Part shown: piece by piece, positions 6,694 to 62,789 of the stretch
Position numbering within the stretch: position 1 is the first letter of the stretch
Layout of the letters: each line of letters starts with the position of its first letter
NCBI GenBank assembly: GCA_000388065.2
Contig: KB932208.1
Length of the DNA stretch: 64,000 bases
Strand: one strand, 5' to 3'
Source: Fonticula alba ATCC 38817
Taxonomy: Eukaryota; Protista; Nucleariida
Notes under the pieces: model-generated
The model's database searches: none
What the model saw: the letters and a program-made list of their open reading frames with translations, nothing else
Told to the model about the DNA's origin: nothing
Translations under genes and position numbers: made by a program

Positions 6694-6759
<66 letters not shown>

Positions 6760-27779: not shown

Positions 27780-27853
<74 letters not shown>

Positions 27854-30192: not shown

Positions 30193-32687
30193 TCGCCAGC
30201 ACGCGCATGATGAAGTCAATTCCTGGGTCGGTCCCTTTTCCCTTGAACCATCGCTCAGCCATTCCCCCCCCCCCCTCCTCCCTCCCTTCCCTCTCCTGTC
30301 CCTCCATCCTTCACACCTCTCCTTGAGGAGGACCGAGGGGGAGAGAGGAGGAACAGAAATACACATGTCCCTTGGAATTTGACGCGCCAATCGGGCCAGT
30401 CTCTCGTATGTCGGCGGGGAGTCGGGGGCGCAGAAACCGGGCGCGAGGCTGCTGCTCCCGCAGTGGGGCGTGCTCACACCTTTCTCCCAGGTATCCTTTG
30501 GCCCCTTGACTGGGAGAGAGCATCATCACACGCGGCGGGCAGTGGTCGGGCTCTGGGGCGGGGGGGGGGGGGGGGGGTGTGGGGAGGGACAGAAGGACAG
30601 AAACTGGCTTAGCCGAGCGGGACCAGTGTCCGTGGGTGAAGGAACGTTTCGCCGGGCATTTATCCCGCTTTGCGACCCCCGTTCGACCCAGGTGCCGGCG
30701 CTCGGCCGCGGTGTTTTGGCGCTCTTGGCAAGCGGGCCAGCTGATTTTCCTTTCATTCTTCCGCGCTTTCCCGCCACGGGCTCCCCTATGCCTGCAATCC
30801 CCGGGGAGGGGAGATCGAAAGGGCGTTGGCAGAAAGCATCGGGCCGGCAAGCTGCGTGGGTGGGACGGGGAGCGGGGGGGGGGGGGGGGGGGGGAGGGGG
30901 GGGGGGGGGGGGGGGGGGGGAGGGGGGCAAGAGAGGGGGGCGAGGGAGGGGGGGGGGCGGGCATGTACTTAAGCCAAGCCAGGGCCCGGCCGGCGGGCGG
31001 GAAAAACGCCTGCGCCGTCGACAGGGCCCGGAAGGGGTGCGGGCTAGTCGCCCCGAAGGGCGGGCACATTCCCGGCGGGCCGTGGGCCGGTCGGCCGGCA
31101 GGCCAAAACCCCGACCGGTACCTGAGCCAGGGCCTTCGCCCGCATGCCGAGCCGGCCAGTGGGTCGGCGGGCTCGGATGGCAAAAATTGCTTTTGTGGCA
31201 GCGAAAAAGAGCAACCACCTGGAGGACACGGCGTCGACATCAAGCCCAGCCATCGAGTGCGCGGCCACGGGCTGGGCTGAGGAAGAGAAAGACAGCGAGG
31301 GGGGAGGGCAGTGAAGGAGTGGGACAAGAGAGCGAGTTGAGCAGAAGGTTGGCGAACCGGATGTGGGACTTTGGCCGCGGCATTTTCCGACAGCAATACG
31401 GCTATCTCCCGGCTCATGGCTGGGGGGGGAAGAACTATCGGGTTTTCCGAGGCAATCCTTTTGTCTGGGCAAGGAAACGAGGGCGATTTTGAAGGGACGG
31501 GGGCCGAGGCCGGTGCATTGGGGCGGAGCGGGGGCCCGTGAGCATGGGCGGTTCTCCTTTGGCGGGTGGGGCCCGCTGGCCCGAGGGTGTTTAGCCCAGA
31601 GCCCGGGCATGGGCAGCCAGGCGTGTGATGGGCGGAGAACGCGAGGGGGGGGGGGNNNNNNNNNNNNNNNNNNNNNNNNNNNNNNNNNNNNNNNNNNNNN
31701 NNNNNNNNNNNNNNNNNNNNNNNNNNNNNNNNNNNNNNNNNNNNNNNNNNNNNNNNNNNNNNNNNNNNNNNNNNNNNNNNNNNNNNNNNNNNNNNNNNNN
31801 NNNNNNNNNNNNNNNNNNNNNNNNNNNNNNNNNNNNNNNNNNNNNNNNNNNNNNNNNNNNNNNNNNNNNNNNNNNNNNNNNNNNNNNNNNNNNNNNNNNN
31901 NNNNNNNNNNNNNNNNNNNNNNNNNNNNNNNNNNNNNNNNNNNNNNNNNNNNNNNNNNNNNNNNNNNNNNNNNNNNNNNNNNNNNNNNNNNNNNNNNNNN
32001 NNNNNNNNNNNNNNNNNNNNNNNNNNNNNNNNNNNNNNNNNNNNNNNNNNNNNNNNNNNNNNNNNNNNNNNNNNNNNNNNNNNNNCCCCCCCCCCCCCCC
32101 GGCTCCAGGATGCGAGGCACCGCCCGAGGGCCGGATCGTTGGGGGTGACCAGAGAGTGGTGCCGGGCACAATATCCATTGTGGGTTATGTCACCTCGTCC
32201 CCGTCAACCCCCCAATCATTTTAGGGCCCCCAGTGAGACCGGCCAGTTTCTCGCGGCGACATCAGGCCTCCTCCCGAAATACGCACGTCTGCCCTTCTTT
32301 CGCAAGCGCCCTGAGACAGTGTCTCCCAAAGAAGAGACAAACACCTGCAAGTGACACGCTCTCCTCCCGCTACCTCCTCAGATCGATCCAACACCTCCTC
32401 GCCAAGACTTCCCCCCACTCCTCCTCCTTCCTTTTTCCAGCCACGACGATTGAGGGCGCGACTCGACAGACCGGCCCCGCGCTATTACCCTTGGGCCGCA
32501 CTAAGTACGCCATTCTTGATTGCTTTCGCTCGCTGCCGCGGCGGTCCGAACACCCACCACCGACATCGCCCACATCCTCGGCCCAGCACGTGCAAGGCCC
32601 TTGTGGTGGACTTTCCCCTGACCTGCAGCCACGCCGACGCTCCCTTGCCCGGCACCCGGTCACGGCCTCCGGCCTGCCGCCCAAAGT

Positions 32688-34591
32688 ATGACCATCGCCG
32701 ATCGCGTGCCTCCGCTCGAGCGGCGGCGCAAGTATCCGTGCATTTTCCCGGGCTGCGCCAAGCGCTTCAGCCGCAGCGAGCATCTCATTCGCCATGTGCG
32801 GACGCATACCGGGGAACGGCCTTTCCCATGCTTGGTCCCCGGGTGCGGGAGGTACTTTTCCCGGAACGACAACCTGCAGCAGCACATGTACACTCGCCAC
32901 CGGGATGTGGTGATGGCGGCCACCGATGGCTTTGGACACCTGGCCGGTCGCGTGGATGCCGCCGGGCCCGGGGGTTTCTTCCCTCTGGCCGATGGCGGGG
33001 AGATGGGCATGCTCGGGGGCTTCAATGCCGGAGCCCCGGGCGCTGGGGTCGGCATGGCCGCCCCGCCGGGAGGCCTGGGAGCCCTGTTTCTCGGAGGCGC
33101 GGATCCCCACGCGAATCCCCACGCCGCCGGCCCGTCGCCGTACTATGGCCAGCATCGGCCGACATCGCCCCTCAGTCCGGGAGACCGGCGCCTGGATGGA
33201 TCGCACTCGGGTCCGGTCAGTCCGGTTTCCCCGGGTGGCGGTGGCCCGGTCGGCGCGGCGGCACTTGGCGGTGTGGCGGCCGCCGCTCGACGGGCCACGG
33301 CCGCCCTGCTGGAGGCCGCTGCCCTTTCGGCCCGTCAAGAGTCCCTTGCCCATGGGGGAATGTTGCTGCGCGGCTCGGGGGGGCCCGCCGGGCCGGCGGG
33401 GGATATGGGCCTCCTGACCGGGGACCTGCCCGTTCCCCCGGAGGGCGGTCCCCCTCCGGCCATTCAGGATAGCGTGGCACTGGAGCAGCTCAGCCAATTG
33501 GCGGTCCTTGTGCAGCGCGACCCGGCCCTGTGGGGCGAGATCCACCGATCCTACCCTCAATTGGGCAGCGCCCTGTACTGGCATATCAATGCCAATATGC
33601 CGGGACTCGGGGCGGCTGTGGCCGCGGCCGCCAGCGCGGAGATGGCCCCCGGCGCTGGGGTCCCGCGCCCCGGGACGGCACCCCACCCGGGCGCTCATCT
33701 GTCGATTACGCATATTCCGCGCTTTGCCAAGCCCACCGAGGGGGAGCCTCTGTCGCCAAGTGAGGCGATGGCCGTGTCGCCGGTTTCCCCGTCCGGCGTA
33801 TCGATTTCGGCACAGTCCTTCGGCATCCATACTCGCCCGGGCCATGGCGGAGCCGTTGGAAGCTCGGCTGTCGAGCCGGGCGCCGGTCTGCGCATCAACA
33901 CGGCCTGCAGCGCCCCTCTGACGGGGCCCCATCGCGGTGCGTCTCGCGGGCAAGGATCGCCCCGTGTGCTTTGGTGCCTCTTATGAGTGTCTGTGAGAGT
34001 GAGAGCAAGGCCCGAGAGGAGGGGGAGAGAGAGAGAGAGAGGCCCCGATGGGAAGGGCAAAGGGCCGGGGAGGAGCCGGCGGAAGGGGGCGAGGGCGGTG
34101 TCTGGTGTATGTATTTGGCTGGAACGTGTGGAGCACAGGGTTCCGGTGCATTTCGGCTAGGATGTGTTCAAGGTGGATATCTAACCGAGCGGCATGTGGT
34201 CGCTGTTCGGCATGCGTGCCACTTGATGTCGGCGCCTATCACCTTTCCCCCATCACAGAGAGAGACTCCATGTCCATGACGCCGCCGGCCAGTTCGGAAC
34301 TTCGATCCCTCGAGTGCGTTCCGATGGCTTGACCCTGCTATTCTGCGCGCCAGTGCCACAGGGGGGGGGGGGGCATACGAGAGACATGTTGCCGCCCCCG
34401 GCGAGGCATCTTTCGTTCGGCATTGCTCTGACCATTGGTTCGTCCATTTCGGGCATTGACGGCCCACTTTTGGCAGATCCGGCAATGAGTCGCGAGTGGA
34501 GGACAGCGTTCGCTGCGAGACAGGCGCCTCGAACTTCCGGGTGCCAATGTCACAAGCCCACTATCCTGGGGGGGGCCATGCCTCAGCCTAT

Positions 34592-34626
<35 letters not shown>

Positions 34627-36043
34627 CGGCACGCGATACTACCCGGGCTATTCGGCCACCGGGAGTGGGGTCGACTTTGTTTCGCCGGCACCTCCAGCCT
34701 CGGCAAAGAGCCATGCGCAGGAGGCCGGCCCCGAGCACACCCCCCTGGTGTATCCGGCGGAGGGGATGACAGACGCGCATGAGCCCAAGCACGCCAGCGA
34801 GGCCGATCGCCGTCGTGCGTCATTCCGAGATCTCCTCACGCCAAGCTCTCCCTTCTCGCCGGAGCACATGGCCGACCTGGGGAGGCTGTCGGCGGGGCAT
34901 CCTTCCAGCGCAATGGGGGCCGGTGGGCCTTCGACGGGGATGTCGCCGGACCGGTGGTACCCCATGTGCACGATCAACCCGGCGGGTCCGGTGCCGGTGG
35001 CGGTCTCCCTGCACGAGGGGGCCCATGGGCATCTAGCAGGCCCAGCAGGGACCTCGGCCCCGGGACCAGGTGTGCACTATCCACCCCGGCAGCAGGAGCA
35101 GCAGCAGCAGCAGCAAGTGCACTATCAGCACGCTGCGAATGGGCACATGCCCCATTGGCTGGACGCCTCGGCCTCGAGGGAACCGTCGCAACAGCACGCT
35201 CCATCCCAACATCAGCCGCAGCAGCAACAGCAACAGCAGCAGCAGCAACATCATCAACACCACCACCAGCACCAACACCACCACCACCACCACCAACAGC
35301 AGCAGCACCACCATGCCGAGGCGGCCAACAAGGAATTGAGCCCGCTGCTTCATGCGCGCTCGGGGTCTTTCGAATTTGAACAGGCGCCGGCCGGCGACGG
35401 TGGGCAGTTCCACCTGGAGGCCGGGCACCGGCTGACGGTGTCGACCCTGGGAGGAGCCCCGGAGACCGTGGCAGACACCCCGGCCGAGGAGGGGCCGGAG
35501 ATGGGGGGCGCCCAGCTGCACCCGATTCCAAAGGCCTCCATCAGCGCGAATGGGGCACTGCCGGCCTCGCCTACCGGGAGGGACTCGATGGGCAGCTGCC
35601 CGTCCGAACCGCAGCAACGGTATGCTGCTTCGCGGCACCACTTTTCGCAGCCATGCTCGATGTATCCCCCGGATCATGGGGGCCATTATGACCAGCAGGA
35701 GCACATGCGGCAGCCTCTCCAGCACTTCCTGTCGGGGGAGCAGCAGCAGCAGCAGCAGCAGCGGCAGCAGCAGCAGGATCGGGACCCGAAACAGCCGCCA
35801 ACCGGTGACTCGGCTCCCTTCCCCAAGATGATGGAGCCCGGGGCCCCGTCAGCAGTGGTAGCTCCGGGGGATGGAGGGGACACCAGCAGCTCGGCATGTG
35901 CCACCCAGGCTGGGACCTATGCCCATGGACCGGACGTATCTATGCCCTCAGCGAACTCCCAGAACCAGCAGCGCGTATACCAGCAGCCGGTCTACCAGCA
36001 TCAGCACCAGCCGCAGCACCACGAGCCAGAGATCCGCCTCTGA
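32688..36043 (+). CDS. C2H2 zinc-finger transcription factor (two fingers, USV1/RGM1-like) with poly-Gln/His C-terminus. Model join(32688..33936,34259..34313,34477..36043)
   Basis: [62 protein letters not shown] donors at 33937 (phase 1) and 34314 (phase 2) with CAG acceptors at 34258 and 34476 join the finger ORF in frame to the Q/H-rich ORF 34496..36043. Confidence 0.8.
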
Positions 36044-41000: not shown

Positions 41001-43477
41001 GGCCACGCTCGTCGCCGCACGCCGGCACCATAAAACCGGGGTGATGCGCAAGAGAGCGAAAAGGGTCTGATCGGACACGGCCCCAGAAGGGCTCGACATC
41101 GCAGGCTCGTTCCAGGGGTCGTGTGGCCGAGGGGCGCGCCTGGGAGGTGTGCGGGAGGGGCAGGGCGGGCACGGCCGCTCGGCTCTCCCGGGCAGCGCAG
41201 GGTGCGTGTGCCCCGGGCCGTCGCACTCGGAACATAGGCCAGTAGTTTACTTCGGCCGGCCGGGAGGCGCAGGCGCGGGGGGGAGTGGGGGGGGTACACC
41301 GACGCGCACTCTGGCGCCGGGCGACTGCCGGCCCCGATGCCCGTCGGGGGCGCAGGGGACGGGGCGCGGGGGGGGGGGGGCGGCGCGACGCGGGCATGCC
41401 CGTCTCCCAGGCCGGCGGCCGCCTGTTTGCCGCGGTGGTTTGTTATTATCCCTCCCCCCCGGAAAGGGGAAAAATTATTAATCGTCTAATAATGAATGTG
41501 ATATATTCTCGGCTGGGGACGAAGTAGCAGCACGCCGGCTGTCCGGTATAACGACCGGGGCGAGAATGGCTCATCCTGGCGAAGGGGGGAGGCCGGGCGG
41601 TCCCCGGCACTCACACGAAGAGCGGCCCTGGCTCCACGTTTCGCCGGAGGGGGGGACCTCGAGTGTCCCGCTCTCCCGGCCTCGCCCTCGACCTTGGACC
41701 GGAGCCTTGCGCCCCGGGTCTCCTTCCGCCTCCGGGAGGAGGGCGGAGAGGGTGTCCCTTGCGTGTGCAGGGCTCTCGGTGGGGACCGAGTGAGCGGGCG
41801 CATTCTTCGCCTGGGAATGTCTCCCGCCTGTTCCTGGGCCGGTGTTTCCACCGGTGGAGGGGGGGCCCTGAGGATAGGGGGGGGGGGGGGGGGGCCGGCC
41901 TGTCATGCGAGGCGGGCCCCGCCACTCACCGCGAGGGATGCGCCTTTCGGCGCGTGTGCGGGGGGGGGGGCGGCGGGGCGTTCGTGCCTCACCTTTTTCG
42001 TGTGCCCCTAGGGAGAGCCCACCGCTGCGTGGGTCATTCTCCCCGGGGAGGGGGGGGGAGAAACGGCGCGGGCGGACAAGGGGCAATTGTTTTTATCTGT
42101 GGTCTCAATGGGAGCCAGGGCACCGTCCGCCCGGACAGGCGTCAAGGGCTGCGAGTGCGAGTCTGCGCGAGCATGCGCGCGCCGGCGGCGCCCCGTTGCC
42201 CTGTTTCACGCTTCCCTGACCGATGCTGTGCTTGCTCGTTTCCGGCGGCCGCGCGTCCCCTCGCAAGGTTGATACCCGGCGCGCGCGGACCATTCCGTCG
42301 GGCACGCGAATCGCTCGAGTCCTCCCCGGGTCCTCGCCCCTGTTGCGGGAGGCGACCTACGTTGGCGGGGCGCGGCATGCAAGGGCGGGCGCACAGGAGA
42401 GGGGTAGTCGGTAAGGGGTATATTATTGCGCGGGTGCGGAGGTCCACCCTCCCCCCCCCCCCCCCCGGGGGGGGTAGCTGAGAGGGGGCCGAGCGGCGAG
42501 AGGCCGGGGGGCGGGACGGGACAGAGGGGGGGCTTGTCGGCTTCCAGCCGCCCGGCTCCTTCTTCGCGCCCCTCTCTCCATCCCCACCTGGTACTTGGGT
42601 TGACGCATGCATGCGGTCCGCGGGGCCCTGTTGCCTGGTGTGTGTGTGTGTGTGTCTGTACATGTACTGCCCCCCCCCCCTCCCCCAAACACCCCTCATC
42701 TCTGGGCCGCGCGCGTTGCCGCAGTTCCAGGGGCATATGCGCGGGACGCAGGCGGGTGGGGGACGGGGAGCCACCAAGGAGAGAGGCGCACACGGGGGGG
42801 GGGGGGACAGGGCGCAGTCGTGTCCCTCGCCTTCTTTCCCTCGAGGCGTCCCCCCAATTTGCCTCTTCCAAGGGGCTTTCGGTGGTGCCTGGAGCGCCTG
42901 GCATGGGTGCACGCGTGTCCGTGAGGCAGGGAGGCGCCGGTGCCGGCCTCTCGGGGTCGGGATGTTCGCCAGGACCAGCCCGGCCTCGATGCCGTGTGCC
43001 CAGGGGGGTCACTGTCGAACCAGCCCCGGCCGGAGGCCTCCCGGCCCGGTGAGCCGGACCCGGACGACCTCCTCTCCCTGCCGGCCTTCAGCAATCTCGG
43101 TGCGTGCGGGCGGCCGGGCCGGGCCCTTGCTCCTGGCCCTGCCCCCCCCCCCCCCCCCCCCCGCCTGGGGAGGAGATATATGAGGACCCGACCCGGCTGC
43201 GGAGAAGGCATGGGACGGTAACCCTTTTTTAAGAGCTTTCTCCTGGTGCGTCTCCCCCTGCTGCGAGTGGGAGCGAGAGCCCTTTTTTTTGCCACCTTCT
43301 TTCTTCTCACCCCCTTGTACGCGTGTGTGTGTGTGCGCCCGACTTTCCCTCCTCCCTAACCCGTGTGCCTTCTCGCCATTTCTCTCTCTCTCTCTCTCTC
43401 CAGTTCCCCTCCCCCCTCCCCTCCCCCCCCCTCGCACCCCCCCACCCCTCCTCTCGCCTGCCGCGCTCTTCAGAATC

Positions 43478-46400
43478 ATGAAGTTCCCGCGCTGGGCCAC
43501 CCTGTGGGCGGTGCTGATGGCTATCTTTGCCATCGGCCTCCTCGCCCCGACCACTTCTGCCCAGCAGAAGTGTGGCCCCAACCACTGTTACCCGGCTGAG
43601 TGTAACGGTCACGCCACCCAGGTGGACTTTGTGTTTGTTTACGACTTCTCCGGTTCCATGAGCCCCACCTGGAACAACCTCAAGGCCGTCGTGCACCATT
43701 TCTTCGACGCGGTCTCCCGCGACAACATGGACGCCACCATCACCATTGTCGGTTATGCGTACAGCAACTCTAAGAACACCCTCCCTCGGATTGCTGTTCC
43801 CACCACCGCCATTACCCCGGGCAACCTGCAGTCCTTCAAGAACTCCTTCGACACGACCACCTTCCCTGGTGGCTATGAGCCCGGTCTGATGGCCCTGGAG
43901 CTTGCCTCCAAGGGTCACACCTACCCCGGCTTCAACATCAATTTCCGTGATGGTGCCCGTCGTGTCTTCGTCCTCTTCACCGATGAGGACTCCGATCCGA
44001 ACACCCTCTACGGTACCAACCAATATGGTGCCTTCCCCACTCATCCGTATGAGACCTTGACCTGCCTCAGCCGGAACACGGCTCCCGCTTCGGATAGCCG
44101 CTTCGTGGCTTCCAAGATGGAGATCGACCGTGTTGGTGCTCACCTGGTTCGCACCGACTCCTTCGTGCACTTCGTCGTGTCCGATCAGACCCCCAACAGC
44201 ATCTACCGTTGCTTCTCGCGCTTCCAGTTCGGCTCGTCTGCCATCAACTACGGCAACAGCAACTTTGTGGACATCTCTTCCGTGTCTGCTGCCCTGGCCA
44301 ACGATCCCCACGCCAAGGATTCGCTCCAGGCCTACATGGTCAACCGTGACATCCTGTCTCGCACCTGGAACATCGACAGCACCACCTCCTCCGGTTCTGG
44401 TACTGCCTTCGTCAACACCATTCTGCAGGCCATCCAGCAGTCTGTCGGTACTTGCCAGGACTGCACCGAATACAAGTGCTCCTCTGGTGCCAACAAGGTC
44501 TGCCTGTCGCCTGAGCACATTTGCGATTGCGCTGGTGTCCGCCACGGCCCTCACGTATGTACCTTTTTTTCCCTCTTCCCTTTCATTCTTTTTGATCCTT
44601 CTTTGTTGGGTTTTTTTTTTGCCACTTCGCCATTGGGCCGCCTGGTTTCTCTAACGACTGCATATACTTCTCTTGGACACATGGGAAATGTGCTTCAACA
44701 AAAAAACCCCATCCTCTCCTTTCCTCTCTCTCTCCCACCGATGGTAGGTTCGTGATTGCGAGAACAAGTGTGTCCTCCCCCAGAACGCCAAGGTCGTGGA
44801 TTGCGCCGGTGTCTGCGGTGGTACCGCCACTCTCAATGGCTGTGGCTTCTGCGCTCGTGATGATGCCGGTTGCCGCTCCGATTGCCGTGGTCGCACCTTC
44901 CCCAACGTCGCTCCCCCGGGCGTCGTTTCCACCGTCTGCCCGAGCTGGATCAAGCCCGAGGACATTGCCTCTCTCTACACCGAGGTCGTGATCGCGGCTC
45001 GTCTCACCTTTGCCGGCACCTCCACTCGTGATATCACCTCCTTTGTGTGTGAGTGGTTCAACAAGCACAAGCGCCACCTCACCAGCACCCAGGAGTGCAT
45101 CTTCGACGCGGCCAAGTACGCCAACGCCGCCGGTGTCAGCGTCGATTCCGCCGCCACCGAGTTCATCAAGCTCGACGGCTGGCGCCGGTTCAGCGGTGTC
45201 TGCCGCAACGCCCCGGTCAGCATCATGGCCCCGCCGCCTGATGCCTGTGGCCAGTGCCGTCAGAACCTCTACGAGCCTGCTCCCTTCTGCCAGCTGGGCT
45301 GCAATGGCCAGTATGCCACTTCCCAGGCCGCCCTCCACGAGATGGACAACTGCAACTCTTGCGTCGGTCCCGACGTGAAGGCCGCCAACCCCAACACCTG
45401 GCGCGATCTCAAGAAGGACGACTGCGGCGTTTGCAATGGCGGCAACAGCGCCAAGAACCAGTGTGGCGTGTGCTTCGAGGACAAGACTCTGGACGGCTGT
45501 GGTCAGCCCAACTGCAAGAAGCTCTTCTGCTCGATCGATTGCAACGATGTCCCCTACACCGCTGTGGACCTGATGCAGCACCACATTGACCCGTGCGGTA
45601 ACTGCGTGCGCATCCGCAACCCGGATGGCTCCGACTACATTGTCGAGGGCAAGCCCCAGCTCCGCCATCCTCGCTGCCTGGACGACTGCATCGGCACTCC
45701 CTACATGAAGGCGGAGACCTGCGATGATGCCCTCACTCCGGCCGATGTGCTTGACACCCCCTCCAAGCTGGACTCCTATTGCCACAAGGCTGCCAGCCAC
45801 TGGACCAACCCCTGCAACAAGTGTGTCCCTCTGGAGGCCACTTCGAAGGCTTGCGTTCGTGATTGCGCCCGCGCCTGGGGCGGTGACTTCTTCCTCGACA
45901 AGTGCCAGGTCTGCCGCAACCCGGCCGACAAGGAGGAGGACCATGAGGATCGCTGCCTCTTCGATTGCAAGAACACTCCCTACCTGGAGTCTGCTGGCAA
46001 GCCCCATGTCTACACCATCTGTGGCCATTGCGTGGCCAAGGACTCGCCGCTCCTGGATGAGCACATTGACTCGTGCGGCCGGTGTGTCCTCAGCCCGGGC
46101 TGGAATGCCGATGATTGCAAGAAGGACTGCTCCGGCGTCTTCCGCCTCGTGACCGACCCCAACGCCCATGTGCTGGATTCCTGCGACGAGTGCCACAACC
46201 CCAACGATCTGTCCAAGTACAACCGCCTGCTTGATGAGTGTGGTCTGTGTGTTACTCTCGAGGATCTCGATGAGAATGGCCAGACCCCCCCCTCGGCTGG
46301 TGCTATTGTTGATGACCTCGGTGTCTTCTGCGGCTGCAAGCCCAAGGCCCAGCCGGTGATGCTTTCGCTGGCTTCCGGCTCTGGCTCCAACAATGGCCAT

Positions 46401-47234
46401 GGTGGTCTGCTCATGGAGTGCGATGACCCTGAGAACCCCGGCAACAAGCTGAACCTCTGCTCGGAGGCCGGCCAGTGCCCGCCTCTCACCGCTTGCGGCA
46501 CCAACGAGAAGGGCGAGACCATCCCGGTGGACATTTGCGGTCGCTGCCCGGTCGGCACCGGCTCCAAGGACAAGGACCATCCCCTCTACGGCTACCTGGA
46601 TGATTGCGACCTTTGCTGCGACACCCACGACCCGAAGGACCTCGAGGCCAACCCCACCTGGGTGGTTTGCAACTCGTCTGTCAGCCCCTGCGGCAACTGC
46701 CACGTTCGTGAGTACCATGACCAGTGCGGCAACTGCCTGGATGTGCCCTTCGGCATTGCCCCGGGTGACACCACCACCCCCCTGCCGAATGACCCGTCCT
46801 GCGTGGCCGGCTGCGATGGCAAGTTCCCCCCTGCTGGCACCCCGCCGGAGGATCTCCCCCGCACCAACGAGTGCAATGTCTGCACTGTGGCCGACTCCGA
46901 TGAGGATAAGCTCTGTGTGACCGATTGCAACGGTGGCCACTACCATAGCGTCAACGGCAAGCCCAGCTTCATCATTGACAGCTGTGACCAGTGCGTCCGC
47001 CCGGAGGATGCCTGCTCCACTCTCGGCACCGGTGCCATCGTCGGTATCGCCATTGGTGCGGTTGCCGCTGTGGCCCTGGTGGCTGTGGCTGCCATCTTCG
47101 CCGTCAAGTACGCCCAGGCCAACGGTCTGTTCGGCCTCAACAAGCCGGCTGCCGACATGTCCTCTGGCAGCAATGCCAACCCCCTGTTCGCCGGTCAGAC
47201 CCAGACCGCCAGCAACCCTCTCTTCGTTGATTAA
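43478..47234 (+). CDS. Type I membrane receptor: signal peptide, vWA (MIDAS) domain, Cys-rich repeats, TM helix and tandem NPxF tail (integrin-beta/SibA-like). Model join(43478..44554,44748..47234)
   Basis: Signal peptide MKFPRWATLWAVLMAIFAIGLLAPTTSA. vWA motifs VDFVFVYDFSGSM, GGYEPGLMAL and FRDGARRVFVLFTDEDSD. About 18 [DN]xCxxC motifs. TM GAIVGIAIGAVAAVALVAVAAIFAVK. Tail NPLFAGQTQTASNPLFVD*. One phase-0 intron GTATGT(44555)..TAG(44747). Strong C-ending codon bias. Confidence 0.85.
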
Positions 47235-48714
47235 GTAGAGAGTGCAATGTATCTCTCCCTTCTCTCTCCTCTCCCCCCTGGTGAGAATAGGCGGGTATGA
47301 AGGCAGCAGCCAGGATCAGGGGGGCGGTCGCGACACGCACGCATGCACGCGCCGCGCGCCCACACATACTGTGTGTGTGTGCGTGGTGGTGCTGGTGATG
47401 GTGTGCCCTCTTCTCTCTCCCTCTCCTTCCTCTCCCCCTCCCTCCCTCCCTCCTTCTTTTCGCGGTGTCCTTCCCTCCCCTCGTCGCTCTCCTGGCGCGT
47501 ACGGGGGGGGGGGGCCAGGTGCTCGCGGAGAGGATGGATGGGACGGGGGGGCGCCCTGGGCGTGAGGCCGAAGGCGCGAGAGAGTCTCCCTTGTGCGCGT
47601 GTGTGTGCACAATATGCCACCTGCGTGCCAGTCCATGCGCATGTGTGTCTATCCACACGCAAATCCCCCTCCTCCCTCTCCCCTCACACGCCCCTTTGTG
47701 TGTGTGTGTGTGTGTGAGTGTGCCCCCCTTTTCCTCTGTCCTTCCCTCTTCACTCACTCAACAATGCTGTAGCCTACTATGCTGTTTGTGTTTCTTCCTG
47801 TCGCTCCTTTTGCTTTTCTTATGGGAACTTGCGCGCGGGGTGAGAGGGGGCGGAGGGCGCGGGGGGCGTGGCCGTGTGGGTGTTCCTCGTGGTTCTTTTT
47901 CTTTCCGGATGGCGTGCAATCATATGTATGCAGCCTCCTCCCTCTTTCGGCCCCTACTCGTCTCCATCTTTTTTCCCCCAGCCGGGGGGAGTGGGGGATA
48001 GCCACGCGTCCGCGATGCTCGGCCTGCGCCGGCTCCTGCCCGAGGGGGGGAACCGTGACATCGCCCTCCTTTGGCCATGATTACGTATGCCTGTGTGTTT
48101 GGAGCGAAGGCGCGGGGGACGTGCGCTGTATTGGAATGGACGGGGGAAACCTGACGCGGCTGCATGCACACGAAGCGCATGCAGCCGCCATTTGAAAGGT
48201 ATTGTGCTGCTTTGCCCCCTCCGCACCTCGCCCCTTTGGGCGCGTGGCATCTTCTCCTGATGCCGGACCTCCATAGGCACACTCCCTCTCTCTATTCCAT
48301 GCCCACTTGGGGAATGAATTGTCCCTTTCGCGTGGCTGTCCCTCCTGAACCGATCTGAGCAAGGGCGGTTGAGCGAGGAAATGGAGTGGGCATAGGGAGA
48401 GGCAGAGAGAGGGCGCAAGAAAACCCACCCCCGGAGGGAATGGCCTCCTCGACCGTGTGACGGGGTGCTGTGGAAGCTCCCCCTGGCTCCGGCTAGGCTA
48501 TCCACATCCCCCGGACATGCACATGAAGACCACGGACAATGGGAGAGTGATCTGACGGCGAGATTGCCGACAGGCTCCTCCCTGGAGATGGATGTGTACT
48601 GATGGCGCTGGAGGGCACCACGTGCCGGTGGTTTCAAGTGACGCTGCGGGGGGGGGGGGGTAGCGCAGGCAAAGGGATAGGGGATTGAGGAAGCCATGCT
48701 CGTCACTTTCTTAG

Positions 48715-49127: not shown

Positions 49128-50525
49128 TTAAGGGAAGGACATCTCGACGGCGAAGGCGAGGCCGAGCTTGACGAACTCCTTGGCGTAGTTGAGGTCGATG
49201 TTGTCGACGGTGTCGTTGACAGTGTGGATGAAGGGGCTGTGCTTGCCGAAGGGGGCCTCGAAGGTGAAGATCGAGCGGTAGCCGAAGTTGTTCCAGGAGG
49301 CGTGGTCAGAGCAGCCGTAACCGCAGAGGCTGTCCTCGTAGGTGATGAGGAGGTACTCGTCGATGAGCTTGGCCAGGAAGTCGCCGAGATCCGGGTCGGT
49401 GTAGTCGCGAATGAGGCCGATCTTGCCGTAGCCCGAGTAGCCGGTCATATCGTACTGGGACATGCCACGGACAATGGTGCCCTTCTCGTAGTAAGCCTTA
49501 GCCACACCAGCGGAACCAAGCAGACCAACCTCCTCGGCGGCGTAGAAGTGGAACTCCAGGGTCAGGTAGGGGCGGAACTGGTGGTCGACCAGGATGCGGA
49601 CGATCTCCAGGAGGGTCATGGTGCCGGAGCCATCATCATCAGCACCCGGGGCGCGGCCGGTGGCCGGGGAGGCGGTGTTGATGGAGTCGAGGTGAGAGCC
49701 GAGGATGACGATGTCCTTGTCGCGCTTGCTGGTGCCGTTGAAGCGGACAATGATGGAGGGCTGAGCGAAGCGGTGCTCGAAGGTCTCCACCTCGACATAG
49801 GGGAGGGTGCCGTTCTGGGTGGCGGCGTTGATCTCCTCCAGAAGCCACATGGTGGACTCGACACCGGAGGGGCTCTCATAGTAGCTGGGAGGGGAGGGGG
49901 GGGGAGGGGAGTCAGCTTGCAGTGGGGAAGGGGGGAACGAGCAGGCAGGCCAGGGCAGCCCCCTCGCAAGGGGGGAGAGGGAGAGAGCGCGCGCGCGAAA
50001 AAAAAAAAGGGGGACCACACGCACCGAGTGTGGAAGGAGGTGAAGGTGGTCAGCTTCTGCAGGTAGCGGTGCATGTCGATGCTCTGGTGGAGCTCGACCA
50101 CCTCGGCCTGGTACTCCAGGGAGGTGGGGATCGGCATGGCGGCCTGGGGGGTGGGGACCACGGCGCCGGTGGCGTACTCCTCGATGTCGGAGATATCACG
50201 GAAGTGGACATCACGACGGATGAGGTCGAACACCTGGGACTCGGTCATCCACTGGCGCTCGGTGTCGCTAGTGGCAATGAGGCGGGCACCGGGGGCCGGC
50301 TGTGGTGGGTGTAGGGGAGGAGAGAGGAGGGGGGGGTGAGTGACAAGGCAAATGTGCGACCAGACAGATGTGCGACCGGGTAGATGTGCGACCGGGCAGA
50401 TGACGAGGCAGGCAATCCAGGAAGAAGAGGGGGGGGGGGGGGGGACGAACAGCAGTGGTGGCCGAGGCCACGGAGGAGATGGACAGGAGTGCGGCAAGGC
50501 CGACGGAAAGCAGCTTGCCCAGCAT
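49128..50525 (-). CDS. Secreted M28-family leucine aminopeptidase (LAP1/Vibrio AP-like). Model complement(join(49128..49884,50025..50299,50451..50525))
   Basis: Signal peptide MLGKLLSVGLAALLSISSVASA and propeptide QWMTESQVFDL..HFRDIS. Zn-binding motifs GSHLDSIN, PGADDDGSG, AAEEVGLLGS, QYDMTGY, YGCSDHASW, PFIHTVND. Intron phases 0 and 2 are consistent. Confidence 0.92.
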
Positions 50526-58352: not shown

Positions 58353-61300
58353 TCAGGCCAGGCCCTGGTAATAGGCGGTCAGGGCCTTGGGCGGCTGGTA
58401 GCCCGAGCGGAGGGGCGAGGAGCGGTTGACTTGCACCGAGCATGGCTGCCCCAGGAGAGCGAGCTTTGGCAGTGGCGAATTGGATTTGTCAGTGCGCGTG
58501 TGTGTACGTGTGGCAGGGGCATTTTGAGCGCCACATGCGTCCGGCGTGCTCGTATGCGGCGCGTACCTGATCCGGAGAGCTGGTTCGGGGGACAAAGTAG
58601 GCAATGTGAGGGGAGATCTTGTGGCACGCCTCGAAGATGGCATCACTGGTGCAGGCCGCCGGCATGGGGGATGTCAGTGGGGGGGGGGAAGGGGACGCAG
58701 GAGTCAAGGCGCGCGTGATGGAAAGGGGAGAGGGGAAGGCCCCGTCAGGACGCACGCCGGAGGGGAAACCATGTTCACGCAATCAAACTGCCCGCTGCCA
58801 ATCAAATTGTCCCGGTGGGCATTGATATGCCCCCGGGAGTTCGACGACCCGGCATATACCACGCCGCCCCATGGCGGACTGAGGAAGATGATATCCGCCT
58901 TTGGGGGGGAGTGCAAAGGGATGGTGGCGGGGAGATGGGGAGGAGGCAGGTCAGAGGGGAGGCCAGCTAAAGTCGGCACAGTGGCGCCCACATGCGCACC
59001 TCAAGGGTTCCATTGTGCGCCAGCTCGAGGAAATCACCCTGGATGAAGGTGATCCGGTCATGGACACCATACACCCGGGCGTTGTTCTCGGCCATGGCCA
59101 GGCGGAAGGGATCCAGATCGATGGCGATGACTGGAATGGGTGAGTGGGGCGCAGGGGGCGCGGAGGGTGAGGCACGGAGCACGATGGTACCACAAGCCCC
59201 GAAGGGCGGGCCGAAGAGGGGAGAATCGAAGGTGGACGTACCTTGTGCGCCCAGTCGAGCAAAGGCAATGGAGTTGCCGCCAGCACCGCAGAAGGGGTCC
59301 AGCACGATCAGCCCTGGGCGCAGACACTGCTCGTCCAGCGAGAAGGACCCGAGACAGCGCTGGGCAATGTCGAGGGCGATCTTCTCCGGGGTCACCGAAA
59401 ACCAAGACTCCCGGTCCATATGGATTCCCTGGTCGAAGCGGGAAAAGAGCTGGTAGCGCTGGGCAAAGTACTTCAGCATGGCTGGCTCAAAGTGCTCGCG
59501 CTTGGCAAGGACCAGCTCGCGGTAGCGAGCCTGAAAGGCAGGCGTCCCGCGGTGGGCGAAGCAAAACTCGGCCACGGCGTCGGACGGAGAGCCGGCCCCC
59601 CGTTGACGAGTGTCGCGAGTGGATCGGCCTCTCTGGCCGCCGGTCTGGCCGTTTTGCCGGGGAGCCGAGGAGCCGCCACGCGATGGGGCATCAGATGCCG
59701 CGGACCAGCCACCGGGAGTGGAGGTGCGATTGCCAGCCTGGTGGTTGTCCGCATCATCGTCATCATCACCAGCACCATGGTTGTTGCCATACTCCTCGAC
59801 GCATCCTTCGGAGGAGTCGGCATCGGAGTCGGCATCGGAGTCGGCATCCGAATCACTGTCCTCACTCGCACTCGAGCAGTCAGACATGGAGTCGGAGCCG
59901 TCGGAGTCGTCGGCCTCTTCGGAATCGGTCAGCATGGTGTCACTGTCCTCGTCCCCGGAGGTGGCATCCGTGGCGTCGCTGCTGTCGGCGTCGATGTCAT
60001 CGCTGTCAGCCTCATCACCAGACGCGGTGTCCTCCTGATCGTCCTCGGCCTCCTCGCGCATGCGACGACTGTGCCGAATGGCACGCGCCCGGCGCCAAAC
60101 ATTGTACTCATCCAAGCCCTTGGTCTTGAGGAGATACTCATCATCCATGAAGTCTACACGGCGGCGGGAGGTCAGCGAAGGAAAACAGCAGGGGAGAGAG
60201 AAAGAGAGGGAGGGAGAGAGAGAGGGAAAAGCACAGGAAGCATGGGCCTCGTGGGTTTATGCAGTGCGCACCCTCATCGCAGCCGGCCTTTCGCGTGTCG
60301 ACGCGCTGCTCGACGATGCGCACGCCGCGCGAAAAGTATGACGAGAAGTCGCCGACACTGGAGCCGGCCACCTCAGCCTCGGTGGCATCCAACGAGGACA
60401 CCGGCAGTGAGGCCTCGGTGTCGGAGTCCGAATCGAAGACAATGTGCAGCCGGCGAACCTGGGCATGCGAGCGGAAAAGCGGCGCCACGGTCAAACTCTC
60501 CCCTTCATCCGACCGATCGTCCTCCAGCTCGTCGAGCAAATCCTCCGGGATGCTGGGGTCCTGCTCTTCATCGGGGGCAGTCCGCTCGATCAATTCGGCC
60601 GAGGCTTGCTCATAGTCGGCGATGATTGAGTGGCGACTGCCCGGGGCCGATGAGGACACGGCGCCCGGGGCCATGGTGGCCGCCAGGACGGGGCCCACAT
60701 CCGGCAAGGTCGGCAGATTCGGATATCCCGGGACCTGAACCGATGGCAGGGGGAAGGCCGGGGGCAGGGGCATCGGCAAGGGAGCAACCGCCGCTCGGCG
60801 GCGCTTGGCCGTGTGTGTCAGAGGAGGCTCCGCCCCCGACGGGGAAGAGGAGTCATCCTCAGAGTCAGAGTCATCTGAGGAATCACTGTCGGCCGTGAGG
60901 ATCGAGAAGGAGATCGAGGGCTTGACCTTGTCGGACTGATCGGAGTCGGATTCCGACATGGGGTCGGGCTCGAACTTCGGCCCGGGCGTGGGCAGGGGCG
61001 CATGCTTGGGCTCGAGATTGGCCGGTTGCTTGGCATGGCAGGCGGATGCCGGCGCCGCCAGCGAGCGAAGATGCGTCGCCTGGGCCAGCAGGAGTTCCTC
61101 CATGGCGGCAAGGCGTCTTTCCGTGGACTTTGCCAGGGACGCCTGGCCCTCGAGCAGCTGAGCCAGCTGTTCTTGCGTGCGATCGACCGATGCTTGAAGT
61201 CGGGCAAGAGCATCGGCCTCATGGGCAGCGGTATCCTGGACCTGTTGCTCTAGGCGCCGAGCCGACTCCAAGGTTAGGAAGCCCACCTTCTCGGAGCGCA

Positions 61301-62096
61301 GGCGCGCCGCCCGGGCCCACTCCATGGGCGAGAGATGGAAGGCCGATGGCGCGGCCTCGCCATTCAGTGGGGAATTGGCCGAGGGGAAGCCGCCGGCCAT
61401 GCCCATGCGCCAAGGCCAGAAGATCTCCTCGCCAACAGGGATAGAGCCGCCAGGGGGGGCAGGCATCAAATCCGCCGGATGTCTGGGCAGGATGAAGTCC
61501 CCAAAGTGTTGGGCATCCCCCGGGCGCAGGGGCGACCGGAGGAAGGTGTGGTCCAGCGAGTGGGTGTCCGAAGTGTGCTGTGCGGTGTCCGAAGCGAAGG
61601 GGTTGTACGGCGCGTAGGAGATGTCATTGTCGACCGGCTTGGAGGGTGGCGAATCGTGGCAGGGGCCGGCCTCGCTCACGGCCTCCGGAGGGGAATCATC
61701 CTGGTCGGGCTCTTGGGGAGGACCATCCTGGTCGGGTTCCTGAGGAGGATCATCCTGATGGGGGCCCTCCTCGGAGGCGGGAGACTCTTCGGAGGAGGGG
61801 GAGAACATCCAGCGCAGCGGCGAGGTGACCAGACGATAAAGGAGGGAGGGGGGTGGGCTGGGGACGGCTGGGGCATCACCAACCACCAGGGCATTGGCAA
61901 CTGCGGCAATATCCGTGCCATGGGCAGGGGGGCTGGCTGTGGGCGACCTCAGATGGGACTGCCGAGTCGAGGCCTTCTCCGCTTGTGGGCGTTGGAGCCC
62001 AGTGGCTCGGCGTCTGGTTGAGGATTGCGAGCTTTGCCGGGAGGCCACAGGGGCCGAGCTAACAGGAGGCATGCCGACCTGGGCGGAGGGGTCCAT
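58353..62096 (-). CDS. TGS1: Trimethylguanosine synthase with a long low-complexity N-terminal extension. Model complement(join(58353..58463,58567..58645,58756..58898,59000..59130,59242..60153,60272..62096))
   Basis: KYFAQRYQLFSRFDQGIHMDRESWFSVTPEKIA, VLDPFCGAGGNSIAFA, VIAIDLD..AENNARVYGV..ITFIQGDF, DIIFLSPPWGG, IAYFVPR, KALTAYY. A phase-1 intron GTGCGC(60271)..TAG(60154) with GCTGAC branch links ORF 60141..62096 in frame; that link is less certain than the catalytic exons. Confidence 0.88.
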
Positions 62097-62789
62097 TCTG
62101 GAAGCGTGGGGGCGGAGGGAGCCGCCACTGCCGGTCGTAGTGTCGAGGAGAGGGCGAGGGGGATGGGCTCACGAGACAGGGGAGGGGAAACGTCCAGCCG
62201 GCAAAGACGGGCACCTGGGGGGACTGGAGAGAGGGGATTATGGGGGAGGGGGTGGGAGGGGAAAAGGGGAGGGGGAAAGGGTGCCAAGAGGCGCGCACTC
62301 CCGGGCCCACAGGGGCCATGCTCTTGACCGGGGCAGCTGGCGGGCGGGGAGGGCGGACGAAGGACCCCGGAGGGGAAAGAGAACCGACGACCAAGATGGC
62401 ATGCCTGCATGGCGCGCGCGCGCCACGCATGACTCTCGGGATTCCGTGGGCAGGAGTCCATTGGCAGTTGTTGCGTTGTGGAAGGGTGTGTGCGCATTTT
62501 TGACATCGGGCACCACCTTGGGGGGAGTCCCGGGGGAGGAGGACAGCCGGGGAGGAAAGGAGGGAAAAGAAGGGTGTGGAGGTTTGGTTGCCTCGCCGCC
62601 GGCCCTCCCCTTTCCGGAAAGACCAACACCGGAGGGGACGATCGTTTGGATGTTTATTGGGAGTCGCGATGTGGGTGTGTATGAACGTGCTTGGGCATGT
62701 CCCGGATACAGGTGCGTCGAGGGGAGGGCGGGGGGATATGTCAGGCGGGCGGGCCGGTAGTCAGACTTGTGTGCCGCTGCGCCGGGCCA

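What the first reader, a model, noticed from the sequence alone, without database searches (positions are those of the whole stretch)
47030..47234. TM and cytoplasmic tail with two NPxF motifs at the integrin-beta spacing
Seen: GAIVGIAIGAVAAVALVAVAAIFAV-K followed by ...NPLF-AGQTQTAS-NPLF-VD*, i.e. 8 residues between the motifs with Thr/Ser just before the second. Established: integrin beta1 has NPIY-KSAVTTVV-NPKY (also 8 residues; the proximal motif binds talin, the distal motif plus the Thr cluster binds kindlin), beta2 uses NPxF, and SibA has a similarly spaced NPLY pair. Inference: the cytoplasmic signalling interface is conserved independently of the ectodomain. The small-residue-rich TM (GxxxxxG/AxxA) could pack against a partner subunit.
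Basis: partly seen in the sequence, partly recalled or inferred. Interest (0 to 1): 0.7.

Follow-up and report, generated by a model that had tools for sequence, protein, structure and literature searches.

The report
Integrin-beta-like tail of Fonticula receptor
The stretch is the membrane anchor and short intracellular tail of an expressed surface receptor of the amoeba Fonticula alba; the tail carries the same paired docking motif, at the same spacing, as animal integrin beta tails, so a lineage said to lack integrins probably still has an integrin-style link from surface to cytoskeleton.

Summary
Observation confirmed. Bases 47031-47234 encode a Gly/Ala-rich transmembrane helix and a 42-residue tail ending NPLF-AGQTQTAS-NPLF-VD-stop.

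It is the C-terminus of a two-exon gene (43478-44554, 44748-47234). Spliced contigs in two runs confirm the intron. The product is 100% identical to Fonticula alba H696_05029, 1187 aa, annotated "hypothetical protein".

Architecture: signal peptide, VWA domain with a DxSxS metal site, about 750 aa of DxCGxC cysteine-rich stalk, glycine-zipper TM, tail.

A profile search of 1.84 billion proteins found 20 cluster representatives with both motifs. N-P-L is invariant in the 18 tails aligned and the gap is always 8. They comprise this gene's own fragment, a second F. alba paralogue and unnamed environmental sequences.

Pfam's integrin-beta cytoplasmic model is the only family hit by 18/18 tails, always below threshold. 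Integrin beta tails are also the best PDB matches.

The protein fails canonical integrin beta tests (no hybrid domain, I-EGF stalk or HDRK motif). It also fails the one Sib marker tested.

Best reading: a new variant of integrin-beta/Sib-like adhesion receptor whose tail docks FERM/PTB adaptors such as talin. The partner is untested.

The scan had already noted the paralogue's tail elsewhere in this genome.

The parts
43478..44554 (+). Exon 1 (aa 1-359): signal peptide, N-terminal Cys motif, VWA domain
   Evidence: ATG at 43478 after a CT-rich leader. 100% identical to aa 1-359 of F. alba H696_05029. A spliced contig starts at 43460.
43478..43567 (+). Signal peptide (aa 1-30, MKFPRWATLWAVLMAIFAIGLLAPTTSAQQ)
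   Evidence: Hydrophobic N-terminus read directly. Modelled as a helix at residues 5-22. Aligned hydrophobic leaders are present in relatives. No signal-peptide predictor was run.
43571..43603 (+). Conserved CGPxxCYxxxC motif (aa 32-42)
   Evidence: C32, G33, C37, Y38 and C42 are invariant in 10 family members. Too short to be a PSI domain.
43616..44452 (+). VWA domain (aa ~47-325) with MIDAS-type DFSGS (aa 56-60, nt 43643-43657), invariant E134 and TDEDSD (aa 168-173)
   Evidence: Pfam VWA E 4e-7. AlphaFold model pLDDT 66. VIA Z 17-18.7 to VWA domains including integrin beta I domains. Invariant columns.
44555..44747 (+). Intron, 193 nt, GT..AG, phase 0
   Evidence: Joint 44554>44748 in spliced contigs of runs X5 and X7; unspliced in DNA run X9.
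44748..47234 (+). Exon 2 (aa 360-1187 plus stop)
   Evidence: 100% identical to aa 360-1187 of H696_05029.
44748..47015 (+). Cysteine-rich stalk (aa 360-1115; 75 Cys; 17 sites matching C-[GDNA]-x-C, 7 of them D-x-C-G-x-C; several as repeated units of the type C-x2-D-C-x-G...D-x-C-G-x-C)
   Evidence: No Pfam family. Model of aa 722-865 has pLDDT 86 and no PDB match.
47031..47105 (+). Transmembrane helix GAIVGIAIGAVAAVALVAVAAIFAV with glycine zipper G-x3-G-x3-G
   Evidence: Two Gly are invariant and a third is present in 15 of 18 family members.
47106..47135 (+). Juxtamembrane motif KYAQANGLFG (family consensus [KR]YAxKNGLxG)
   Evidence: Y in 17/18, G in 18/18, L in 14/18. Unlike the integrin HDR[RK]E region.
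47178..47189 (+). Proximal NPLF
   Evidence: N, P and L invariant in 18/18; Y in 16 and F in 2.
47190..47213 (+). Eight-residue spacer AGQTQTAS (Thr/Ser-rich, strand-like alternation in the family)
   Evidence: The gap is 8 in all 20 representatives that carry both motifs. It aligns to KSATTTVM and KSAITTTI of integrin beta2 and beta7.
47214..47225 (+). Distal NPLF, two residues from the C-terminus
   Evidence: N and P invariant, L in 17/18. Followed by 2-10 residues in 22 tail sequences listed (including cluster members and the window gene's own fragment).

Best explanation
The stretch is the membrane anchor and cytoplasmic tail of an expressed type I surface receptor of Fonticula alba, gene H696_05029, 1187 aa.

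Outside the cell, the receptor presents a metal-dependent VWA ligand-binding head on a long, disulfide-rich DxCGxC stalk.

The glycine-zipper TM helix probably packs against another helix. That could be self-association or a partner protein. It may also make surface delivery dependent on TM9/Phg1-type cargo receptors, as shown for the Gly-rich TM domain of Dictyostelium SibA.

Inside the cell, the two invariant NPL[YF] turns, held exactly 8 residues apart with a Thr/Ser-rich strand between them, act as docking sites for PTB-like F3 lobes of FERM adaptors. Talin is the prime candidate for the proximal site. A second FERM or PTB protein is the candidate for the distal site plus the strand. Docking couples the receptor to actin for substrate, particle or cell adhesion.

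Both F. alba paralogues have Phe instead of Tyr, as integrin beta2 does. Binding there cannot be switched by tyrosine phosphorylation.

Shown: the sequence, the splicing, transcription, the identity of the gene, family-wide conservation, and the sub-threshold but consistent similarity to the distal half of integrin beta tails.

Inferred: surface location, adaptor binding, the actin link, TM packing and TM9 dependence.
For: Gene model and transcription:
- Spliced contigs in two runs skip exactly 44555-44747.
- Both exons are 100% identical to F. alba XP_009497175.1.

Architecture:
- VWA with DxSxS.
- Cys-rich stalk.
- TM helix and tail.

Conservation:
- 20 cluster representatives out of 1.84 billion proteins have NPx[FY]-x8-NPx[FY] at the C-terminus, and the gap is always 8.
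- N-P-L and the TM glycines are invariant in the 18 tails aligned.

Similarity to integrin tails:
- PF08725 Integrin_b_cyt is the top Pfam family for the window tail (E 0.037).
- It is the only family hit by 18/18 tails, best E 9e-4.
- Integrin beta tails make up 11 of the 16 best PDB matches of the tail profile; beta2 has E 0.004 and beta7 E 0.008.

Functional precedent from papers:
- SibA has a VWA domain, a Gly-rich TM domain and two NPxY motifs. It binds talin through the proximal NPxY (PMC9197732).
- SibA carries talin-borne force (PMC12686525).
- Its Gly-rich TM domain confers TM9-dependent surface targeting (PMC4510845).
Against: - No binding partner was identified. I could not search the F. 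alba proteome for talin. The only hints are unverified scan notes of FERM-like genes, one of which describes a talin-head-like gene lacking F2-F3.
- All similarity to integrin tails is below Pfam's gathering score (14.2 versus 23.4 bits) and confined to about 18 residues dominated by the two motifs.
- The Trp that talin F3 contacts upstream of the integrin NPxY is absent. A conserved D-[FM] sits one to two residues further upstream instead.
- The membrane-proximal helix that talin also binds in integrins is not conserved here.
- NPxY motifs also serve as sorting signals.
Confidence: 0.6

Rival explanations
1. The two NPL[YF] motifs are mainly trafficking signals. They would be read by endocytic or recycling adaptors (PTB proteins of the Dab2/ARH/Numb type, or SNX17-like FERM sorting nexins) and would set the receptor's surface level, without any mechanical link to actin.
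For: NPxY is a classic internalisation and recycling signal, and integrin tails themselves are read this way (established knowledge). SibA surface level and endocytic sorting are actively controlled (PMC3279395). Nothing distinguishes docking for force from docking for sorting.
Against: The classic signal is [FY]xNPxY, but the residue two before the first Asn is Asn in 14/18 tails and never aromatic. One motif would suffice for sorting. Strict conservation of two motifs at a fixed 8-residue gap, with a strand-like spacer and a near-terminal position, mirrors the talin/kindlin/filamin-binding part of integrin tails.
Confidence: 0.2
2. The protein is a true but very divergent integrin beta subunit that pairs with an unrecognised alpha subunit. 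Under this reading Holomycota did not lose integrins.
For: - The order of parts is the same: VWA head, Cys-rich stalk, TM helix, NPxY-x8-NPxY tail.
- There is an invariant Glu in GGxEPG where beta I domains have the MIDAS Glu.
- Integrin beta headpieces are the commonest Foldseek hits.
- PF00362 is hit weakly by 3 of 10 relatives, best E 4e-6.
- All tails hit PF08725.
Against: - There is no hybrid or PSI domain; the VWA starts 17 residues after the signal peptide.
- The stalk has no I-EGF signal in Pfam and no PDB match.
- VIA Z-scores tie beta I domains with Rpn10, ITIH, VWF A1 and alpha I domains.
- There is no HDR[RK]E clasp motif.
- The window protein itself does not hit PF00362.
- No FG-GAP-type gene appeared among the neighbouring ORFs scanned.
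- Published surveys report no integrins in F. alba (PMC9097593).
Confidence: 0.1
3. The resemblance is convergent or incidental, and the tail has no adaptor-binding role.
For: The matches to integrin models are below threshold and rest on a short, low-information motif.
Against: N-P-L is invariant at both sites, the gap is fixed, and the juxtamembrane motif is conserved across proteins whose ectodomains are only about 28-35% identical. This shows strong purifying selection on the tail. No differences fall in the TM helix or tail between the two F. alba-like DNA sources.
Confidence: 0.05

Closest known systems
Dictyostelium Sib proteins (SibA-E, 'similar to integrin beta')
   Same: Type I receptor of a free-living amoeba with an extracellular VWA domain, a glycine-rich single TM helix and a short conserved tail with two NPxY-type motifs. 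It functions without a known alpha subunit. The proximal motif of SibA binds talin A (PMC9197732, PMC12686525).
   Different: - Pfam's Sib-specific VWA model PF24909 is hit by none of 10 family heads.
- The ectodomain here is a DxCGxC cysteine stalk, and the protein is 1187 aa, not about 1900.
- Sib proteins were reported only in dictyostelids (bioRxiv 10.1101/2020.04.29.069435), whereas this organism is a holomycotan.
- No Sib sequence could be fetched, so tail-to-tail similarity is untested.
Metazoan/holozoan integrin beta subunits
   Same: VWA-type head with a DxSxS metal site, a Cys-rich stalk, one TM helix, and NPx[YF]-x8-NPx[YF] with a Ser/Thr-rich spacer 2-3 residues from the C-terminus. 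Integrin tails are the best Pfam and PDB matches of the tail.
   Different: No PSI or hybrid domains, no I-EGF repeats, no beta-tail domain signal, no HDR[RK]E membrane-proximal helix and no Trp before the first motif. The TM helix is a glycine zipper. Every curated integrin model scores below threshold.
Amoebozoan 'type I ITGB' of Kang et al. (bioRxiv 10.1101/2020.04.29.069435; Curr Biol 2021)
   Same: A protist VWA plus Cys-rich stalk plus TM plus NPxY receptor that lacks the alpha-interacting motif. The stalk motif contains DxCGxC.
   Different: Their stalk pattern DXCGXCGGX(3-6)CXGC occurs zero times in 12 family members. Only the DxCGxC core is shared. Their proteins were collected through integrin Pfam models at E below 1e-10 or through orthology to human ITGB1, which this family would fail. 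No sequences were available for direct comparison.

Membership tests
Integrin beta subunit | Beta I (VWA-fold) head with MIDAS DxSxS | tested here: met
   DFSGS at aa 56-60, invariant D/S/S plus E134 and TDEDSD. VWA fold with Z 17-18.7. However, the fold evidence does not separate beta I from other VWA domains.
Integrin beta subunit | Pfam Integrin_beta (PF00362) at gathering score | tested here: not met
   No hit for the window protein at E up to 10. Weak hits in 3 of 10 relatives, best E 4.1e-6; P0018 scores 23.2 bits against a cut-off of 24.8.
Integrin beta subunit | PSI and hybrid domains flanking the head | tested here: not met
   The VWA strand starts at residue 48, 17 residues after the signal peptide. 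Only an 11-residue CGPxxCYxxxC motif precedes it. The model has no beta-sandwich.
Integrin beta subunit | Stalk of four I-EGF domains plus beta-tail domain | tested here: not met
   No EGF or integrin stalk family in Pfam at E up to 1. A confident stalk model (pLDDT 86) has no PDB match: Foldseek best E 1.9, VIA none at Z 2 or above. Caveat: elongated disulfide modules are hard to match.
Integrin beta subunit | Membrane-proximal KLLxxxHDR[RK]E helix (alpha-subunit clasp) | tested here: not met
   The family consensus after the TM helix is [KR]YAxKNGLxG. Pfam PF08725 aligns only its positions 27-44.
Integrin beta subunit | Two NPx[YF] motifs 8 residues apart near the C-terminus | tested here: met
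   Aligned to beta2, beta7, beta3 and beta1 tails.
Integrin beta subunit | Pfam Integrin_b_cyt (PF08725) at gathering score | tested here: not met
   14.2 bits against a cut-off of 23.4 for the window tail. Even so, it is the top family and is hit by 18/18 tails, best E 8.9e-4.
Integrin beta subunit | Obligate alpha-subunit partner | not testable with these tools
   The F. alba proteome cannot be searched here. No FG-GAP family appeared among 10 neighbouring ORFs.
Sib family (Dictyostelium) | Sib-type VWA domain (Pfam PF24909 vWA_SIBA-E) | tested here: not met
   Hit by 0 of 10 family heads at E up to 10.
Sib family (Dictyostelium) | Glycine-rich TM domain with Gly on one face | tested here: met
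   Four Gly in the window's TM region. G-x3-G-x3-G is conserved (18/18, 18/18, 15/18). The Sib feature is as described in PMC4510845.
Sib family (Dictyostelium) | Conserved tail with two NPxY motifs that binds talin | tested here: inconclusive
   The motifs are present. No Sib sequence was obtainable for alignment, and binding cannot be tested in silico here.
Amoebozoan type I ITGB (Kang et al.) | Stalk pattern DXCGXCGGX(3-6)CXGC, 3-7 copies | tested here: not met
   Zero matches in 12 family members. The core D.CG.C occurs in 1-21 copies (5-21 in 11 of the 12).

The most novel reading that the evidence does not exclude
This family would be a surviving holomycotan and environmental-protist branch of one ancestral amorphean receptor built as VWA head, Cys-rich stalk, glycine-rich TM helix and NPxY-x8-NPxY tail. 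Integrin beta subunits and Dictyostelium Sib proteins would both descend from that ancestor. In F. alba the receptor would be the talin-coupled adhesion molecule behind substrate adhesion and the actin-rich cell-cell contacts of collective invasion and fruiting. The fungal side of the opisthokonts would then have kept an integrin-style mechanical link after losing canonical integrins.
Probability: 0.25. Interest if true: 0.85.

Novelty: new variant of a known kind. Interest (0 to 1): 0.62.

Why it matters
Three points from the papers I could read set the context:
- Toret et al. [quoted passage not shown]
- Kang et al. describe Holomycota as devoid of integrins.
- The 2025 talin force-coupling study (PMC12686525) names the relation between SibA and integrins as an open question and calls for work in more single-celled species.

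This gene is annotated only as "hypothetical protein". It is transcribed and spliced, it has a paralogue, and it belongs to a family with at least 20 cluster representatives. Its tail is the closest non-integrin match to the talin/kindlin-binding half of integrin beta tails that I could find.

It gives a concrete, testable candidate for the adhesion receptor of a culturable amoeba on the fungal side of the opisthokonts, one for which live imaging has been published. It also provides a third lineage for asking whether NPxY-pair tails are inherited or convergent.

Tried and rejected
Leads that went nowhere:
- Single-sequence phmmer of the tail against the PDB found nothing. Only the family profile reached integrin tails.
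- The word-indexed search with the tail region of the full protein found only one relative and missed the known paralogue, so it has no power for short tails. The same search with the VWA region found no named protein.
- The ESM Atlas gave only generic VWA leads for exon 1 and nothing usable for the tail.
- Cornillon et al. 2006 is not held. Table 1 of PMC4510845, with the SibA TM sequence, is not in the held text. The Sib tail and TM helix could therefore not be aligned.
- No paper in the library states whether F. alba has talin.

Slips and unusable results:
- The first four-row alignment (A1) smeared exon 1 across the whole protein and was discarded.
- Alignment A4 used a wrong reading frame for the window piece and was redone as A5.
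- The codon-usage score was trained on this gene itself, so it is circular and is not used. In that script the two exon strings were concatenated in memory for codon counting only.
- The full-length protein used later (P0154) is the database record returned, not a hand-made join. All earlier searches were done exon by exon.

Expression level:
- I did not rank it. Contig word depths of about 1,800-9,800 have no reference gene beside them.

Rejected readings:
- A trypanosomatid origin, my first impression from GC content and GT repeats, is rejected by the intron and the identity to F. alba.
- An EH-domain NPF signal is rejected because the motif is NPLF, not NPF.
Full report
**1. Observation**

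Exact coordinates:
- TM helix 47031-47105
- 42-residue tail 47106-47231
- proximal NPLF 47178-47189
- distal NPLF 47214-47225
- stop 47232-47234

A regex over all six frames of the window finds only three NPx[FY] in 128,000 codons. Two of them are these, and this is the only pair within 4-14 residues.

**2. The gene**

The ORF holding the tail opens only at 44796. An upstream ORF in another frame starts with a signal-peptide-like Met at 43478 and holds a VWA domain.

The sequence shows a GTATGT donor at 44555 and an AG acceptor at 44746-44747, which joins the frames in phase 0.

Laying public runs on 43300-47400 confirmed this:
- Contigs of two runs, X5 and X7, skip exactly 44555-44747 (193 nt, GT..AG). 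A DNA run, X9, reads through it.
- X5 and X7 are labelled 'RNA?' as a guess. The splice shows they contain cDNA, so the gene is transcribed and spliced.
- The spliced contig begins at 43460, 18 nt before the ATG.

A cluster look-up of a fragment found in the library returned a 1187-aa member: F. alba H696_05029 (XP_009497175.1, A0A058Z490), named 'hypothetical protein / VWFA domain-containing protein'. Its residues 1-359 and 360-1187 are 100% identical to exon 1 and exon 2. The window is therefore Fonticula alba, and the gene is annotated but uncharacterised.

The second DNA source, 'organism B' (run X9), differs at four bases in the coding region (S261T, S801P and two synonymous changes). None falls in the TM helix or tail.

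**3. Architecture**

| Part | Residues | Evidence |
|---|---|---|
| Signal peptide | 1-30 | read from sequence, |
| CGPxxCYxxxC motif | 32-42 | |
| VWA domain | about 47-325 | |
| Cys-rich stalk, 75 Cys | 360-1115 | |
| TM helix | 1121-1145 | |
| Tail | 1146-1187 | |

*VWA head.* Ten family heads share an invariant D56-x-S58-x-S60-M, an invariant E134 in GGxEPG, and T168-D-E-D-S-D. An AlphaFold model built on that alignment (pLDDT 66) is a VWA fold.
- Foldseek's top 50 are mostly integrin beta headpieces, but all E-values lie near 1e-7.
- VIA-align ties integrin beta I domains (Z 17.4-18.3; Pactolus 18.5) with Rpn10, ITIH, VWF A1 and alpha I domains.
- A profile search of PDB sequences likewise mixes collagen VI, alpha I domains and beta8.

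The head is a metal-site VWA. Whether it is specifically beta-I-like is undecided. There is no room for PSI or hybrid domains.

*Stalk.* It is built of repeated units of the type C-x2-D-C-x-G ... D-x-C-G-x-C. It hits no Pfam family. A confident model of residues 722-865 (pLDDT 86) has no structural match. Foldseek's best E is 1.9, the Foldseek-independent VIA search of 48,161 chains finds nothing at Z 2 or above, and ESM Atlas TM-scores are below 0.45.

**4. The tail defines a family**

The word-indexed search with exon 2 found two relatives at 28-29% identity with the same architecture and a tail ending NPLY-x8-NPLY.

A profile of these three, searched against 1.84 billion representatives, gave 489 hits. 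Most match only the Cys repeat, but about 22 align through the C-terminus.

In the last 60 residues, 20 representatives carry NPx[FY]-x(4-14)-NPx[FY], and the gap is 8 in every one. One of the 20 is a fragment of the window's own gene. A 61-residue fragment that is only TM plus tail scored 74 bits, so the module would be found on any ectodomain. Among the 150 listed hits it occurs only on VWA plus DxCGxC proteins.

Named members are only the two F. alba proteins: H696_05029 and H696_03181 (1569 aa, tail NPLFTSRTTTADNPLF). All others come from unlabelled metagenome, ENA or Logan assemblies.

The alignment of 18 TM-tail segments shows:
- two invariant TM glycines and a third in 15/18, spaced G-x3-G-x3-G
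- a conserved juxtamembrane motif [KR]-Y-A-x-K-N-G-L-x-G
- a conserved D-[FM] six to seven residues before the first motif
- invariant N-P-L at both motifs, with L in 17/18 at the second
- Y or F at the fourth motif position
- a spacer with alternating polar and beta-branched residues
- 2-10 residues after the second motif

Ectodomains are only about 28-35% identical, so the tail is under much stronger constraint.

**5. Comparison with integrin tails, tested**

Each of the 18 TM-tail pieces was scanned against all 24,736 Pfam models. PF08725 (Integrin_b_cyt) is the top family for the window's piece: E 0.037, 14.2 bits against a gathering score of 23.4, profile positions 27-44 of 44. It is the only family hit by 18 of 18 pieces, best E 8.9e-4.

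The tail profile was also searched against all 177,635 distinct PDB sequences. The best hits are the integrin beta2 tail (E 0.0038), beta7 (0.0076 and 0.017), beta3, beta1 and beta1D. Integrin tails are 11 of the top 16. The rest are Gly-rich TM helices such as APP and PsbJ, matched only through the TM part.

The similarity is therefore real and specific to the distal, NPxY-pair half of the integrin tail. It is sub-threshold. The membrane-proximal integrin helix (HDR[RK]E) has no counterpart.

**6. Comparison with Sib and amoebozoan ITGBs**

The papers describe Sib A-E as follows:
- VWA-bearing, Gly-rich-TM receptors with two NPxY motifs
- talin A binds them through the proximal motif (PMC9197732)
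- they are needed for talin to bear force (PMC12686525)
- their Gly-rich TM domain makes surface delivery depend on TM9/Phg1 (PMC4510845)

That is the closest functional analogue.

Membership fails on the one Sib marker I could test: Pfam vWA_SIBA-E is hit by none of 10 heads, while Integrin_beta is hit weakly by three.

Kang et al. (bioRxiv 10.1101/2020.04.29.069435) describe amoebozoan 'type I ITGB' with a DXCGXCGGX(3-6)CXGC stalk motif. That strict pattern occurs in none of 12 family members; only the DxCGxC core is shared. Their collection criteria, integrin Pfam models at E below 1e-10 or orthology to human ITGB1, would miss this family. The word Fonticula does not occur in their text.

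**7. Mechanism**

The best-supported reading is an adhesion receptor whose tail docks PTB-like F3 lobes of FERM adaptors. Talin is the prime candidate at the proximal NPLF. A second adaptor would bind the strand plus the distal NPLF. The glycine-zipper TM helix mediates helix packing and possibly TM9-dependent sorting.

Kindlin is unlikely to be the distal partner, because kindlins are reported to emerge in early metazoans (PMC4325847).

Phe at both motifs in both F. alba paralogues, against Tyr in most relatives, rules out tyrosine-phosphorylation control there. Integrin beta2 also has Phe.

The main rival is a purely trafficking role for the motifs. What argues against it:
- there is no aromatic residue at the [FY]xNPxY position
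- two motifs are kept at a fixed distance, which sorting would not need

The rival is not excluded, and integrins use the same motifs for both purposes.

**8. What is missing**

I could not search the F. alba proteome, so the partner is unidentified. Earlier scan notes mention FERM-like genes in this genome, including a talin-head-like gene lacking F2-F3 and a tandem-FERM gene. They are unchecked, and the first would even argue against a canonical talin.

No integrin-alpha-like gene was among the neighbouring ORFs scanned. The neighbours are a Diaphanous-type formin, a C2H2 zinc-finger protein, an M28 peptidase and a TGS1-like methyltransferase.

**9. Novelty and score**

- The gene is in the databases as a hypothetical protein.
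- Toret et al. 2022 state that F. alba lacks obvious integrins and Dictyostelium-like adhesion molecules.
- I found no paper describing this family.
- The scan had already flagged the paralogue's tail on another piece of this genome (s1-065474) and this whole gene (s1-065348). I reached the same reading independently and confirmed that a paralogue with the TTT spacer exists in F. alba.

I class it as a new variant of a known kind, the integrin-beta/Sib-like NPxY-pair receptors. It is of moderate to high interest because it makes two open questions directly testable in a culturable organism: what F. alba adheres with, and how Sib and integrins are related.

- Read laying was given 4,101 letters.
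- Exons were searched separately by reference.
- The only full-length protein used is the stored database record P0154.

Noticed in passing
window 44748-47015 (protein aa 360-1115); model of aa 722-865: The DxCGxC cysteine-rich repeat folds with high confidence (pLDDT 86) but has no match in Pfam, the PDB (Foldseek and VIA wide) or the ESM Atlas. The same repeat accounts for most of the 489 library hits, many of them very long proteins (up to 4098 aa). It looks like a widespread, undescribed disulfide-rich module.
   Followed up: partly
window 22284-29108 (+) and 26242-27897 (-): ORFs with Diaphanous FH3 (24930-26036) and FH2 (28023-29108) domains indicate a formin gene. An ORF on the opposite strand at 26242-27897 hits the C-terminal domain of phospholipid-translocating P4-ATPases. 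This is the same oddity as another first-reader note on this window.
   Followed up: no
window 49131-50195 (-), 58970-60256 (-), 32622-33983 (+): Neighbouring ORFs hit Peptidase_M28 (E 7e-34), RNA cap guanine-N2 methyltransferase (TGS1-like) and a C2H2 zinc finger. Several other long GC3-rich ORFs (34460-36040, 60144-62168, 22284-24629, 13369-15018) hit no Pfam family.
   Followed up: no
window 43300-47400, run X9 ('organism B'): DNA runs from 2025 under another organism label, and soil, sediment and sludge metagenomes, hold this locus almost unchanged. There are four substitutions (S261T, S801P, two synonymous) and two 1-nt deletions inside the intron (44611, 44700). A 2026 RNA-seq run under the same label laid no reads, although only about 6% of it was read.
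   Followed up: partly
window 43290-43470 and 47235-47400: The gene is flanked by a long polypyrimidine (CT/C-rich) tract immediately upstream of the transcript start, and by a CT-rich tract followed by a GT-repeat-rich 3' region. The intron carries long T runs. These look like typical regulatory or UTR composition for this genome but were not analysed.
   Followed up: no
L001 (Logan SRR28397937 contig, 15.3 kb), gene at 8001-10364: A tail-bearing relative (P0023, 787 aa) is a single uninterrupted ORF on a gene-dense contig. Its neighbours are a guanylate cyclase, an alpha-amylase and a GT5-type glycogen/starch synthase. This could help identify which organisms carry the family.
   Followed up: no
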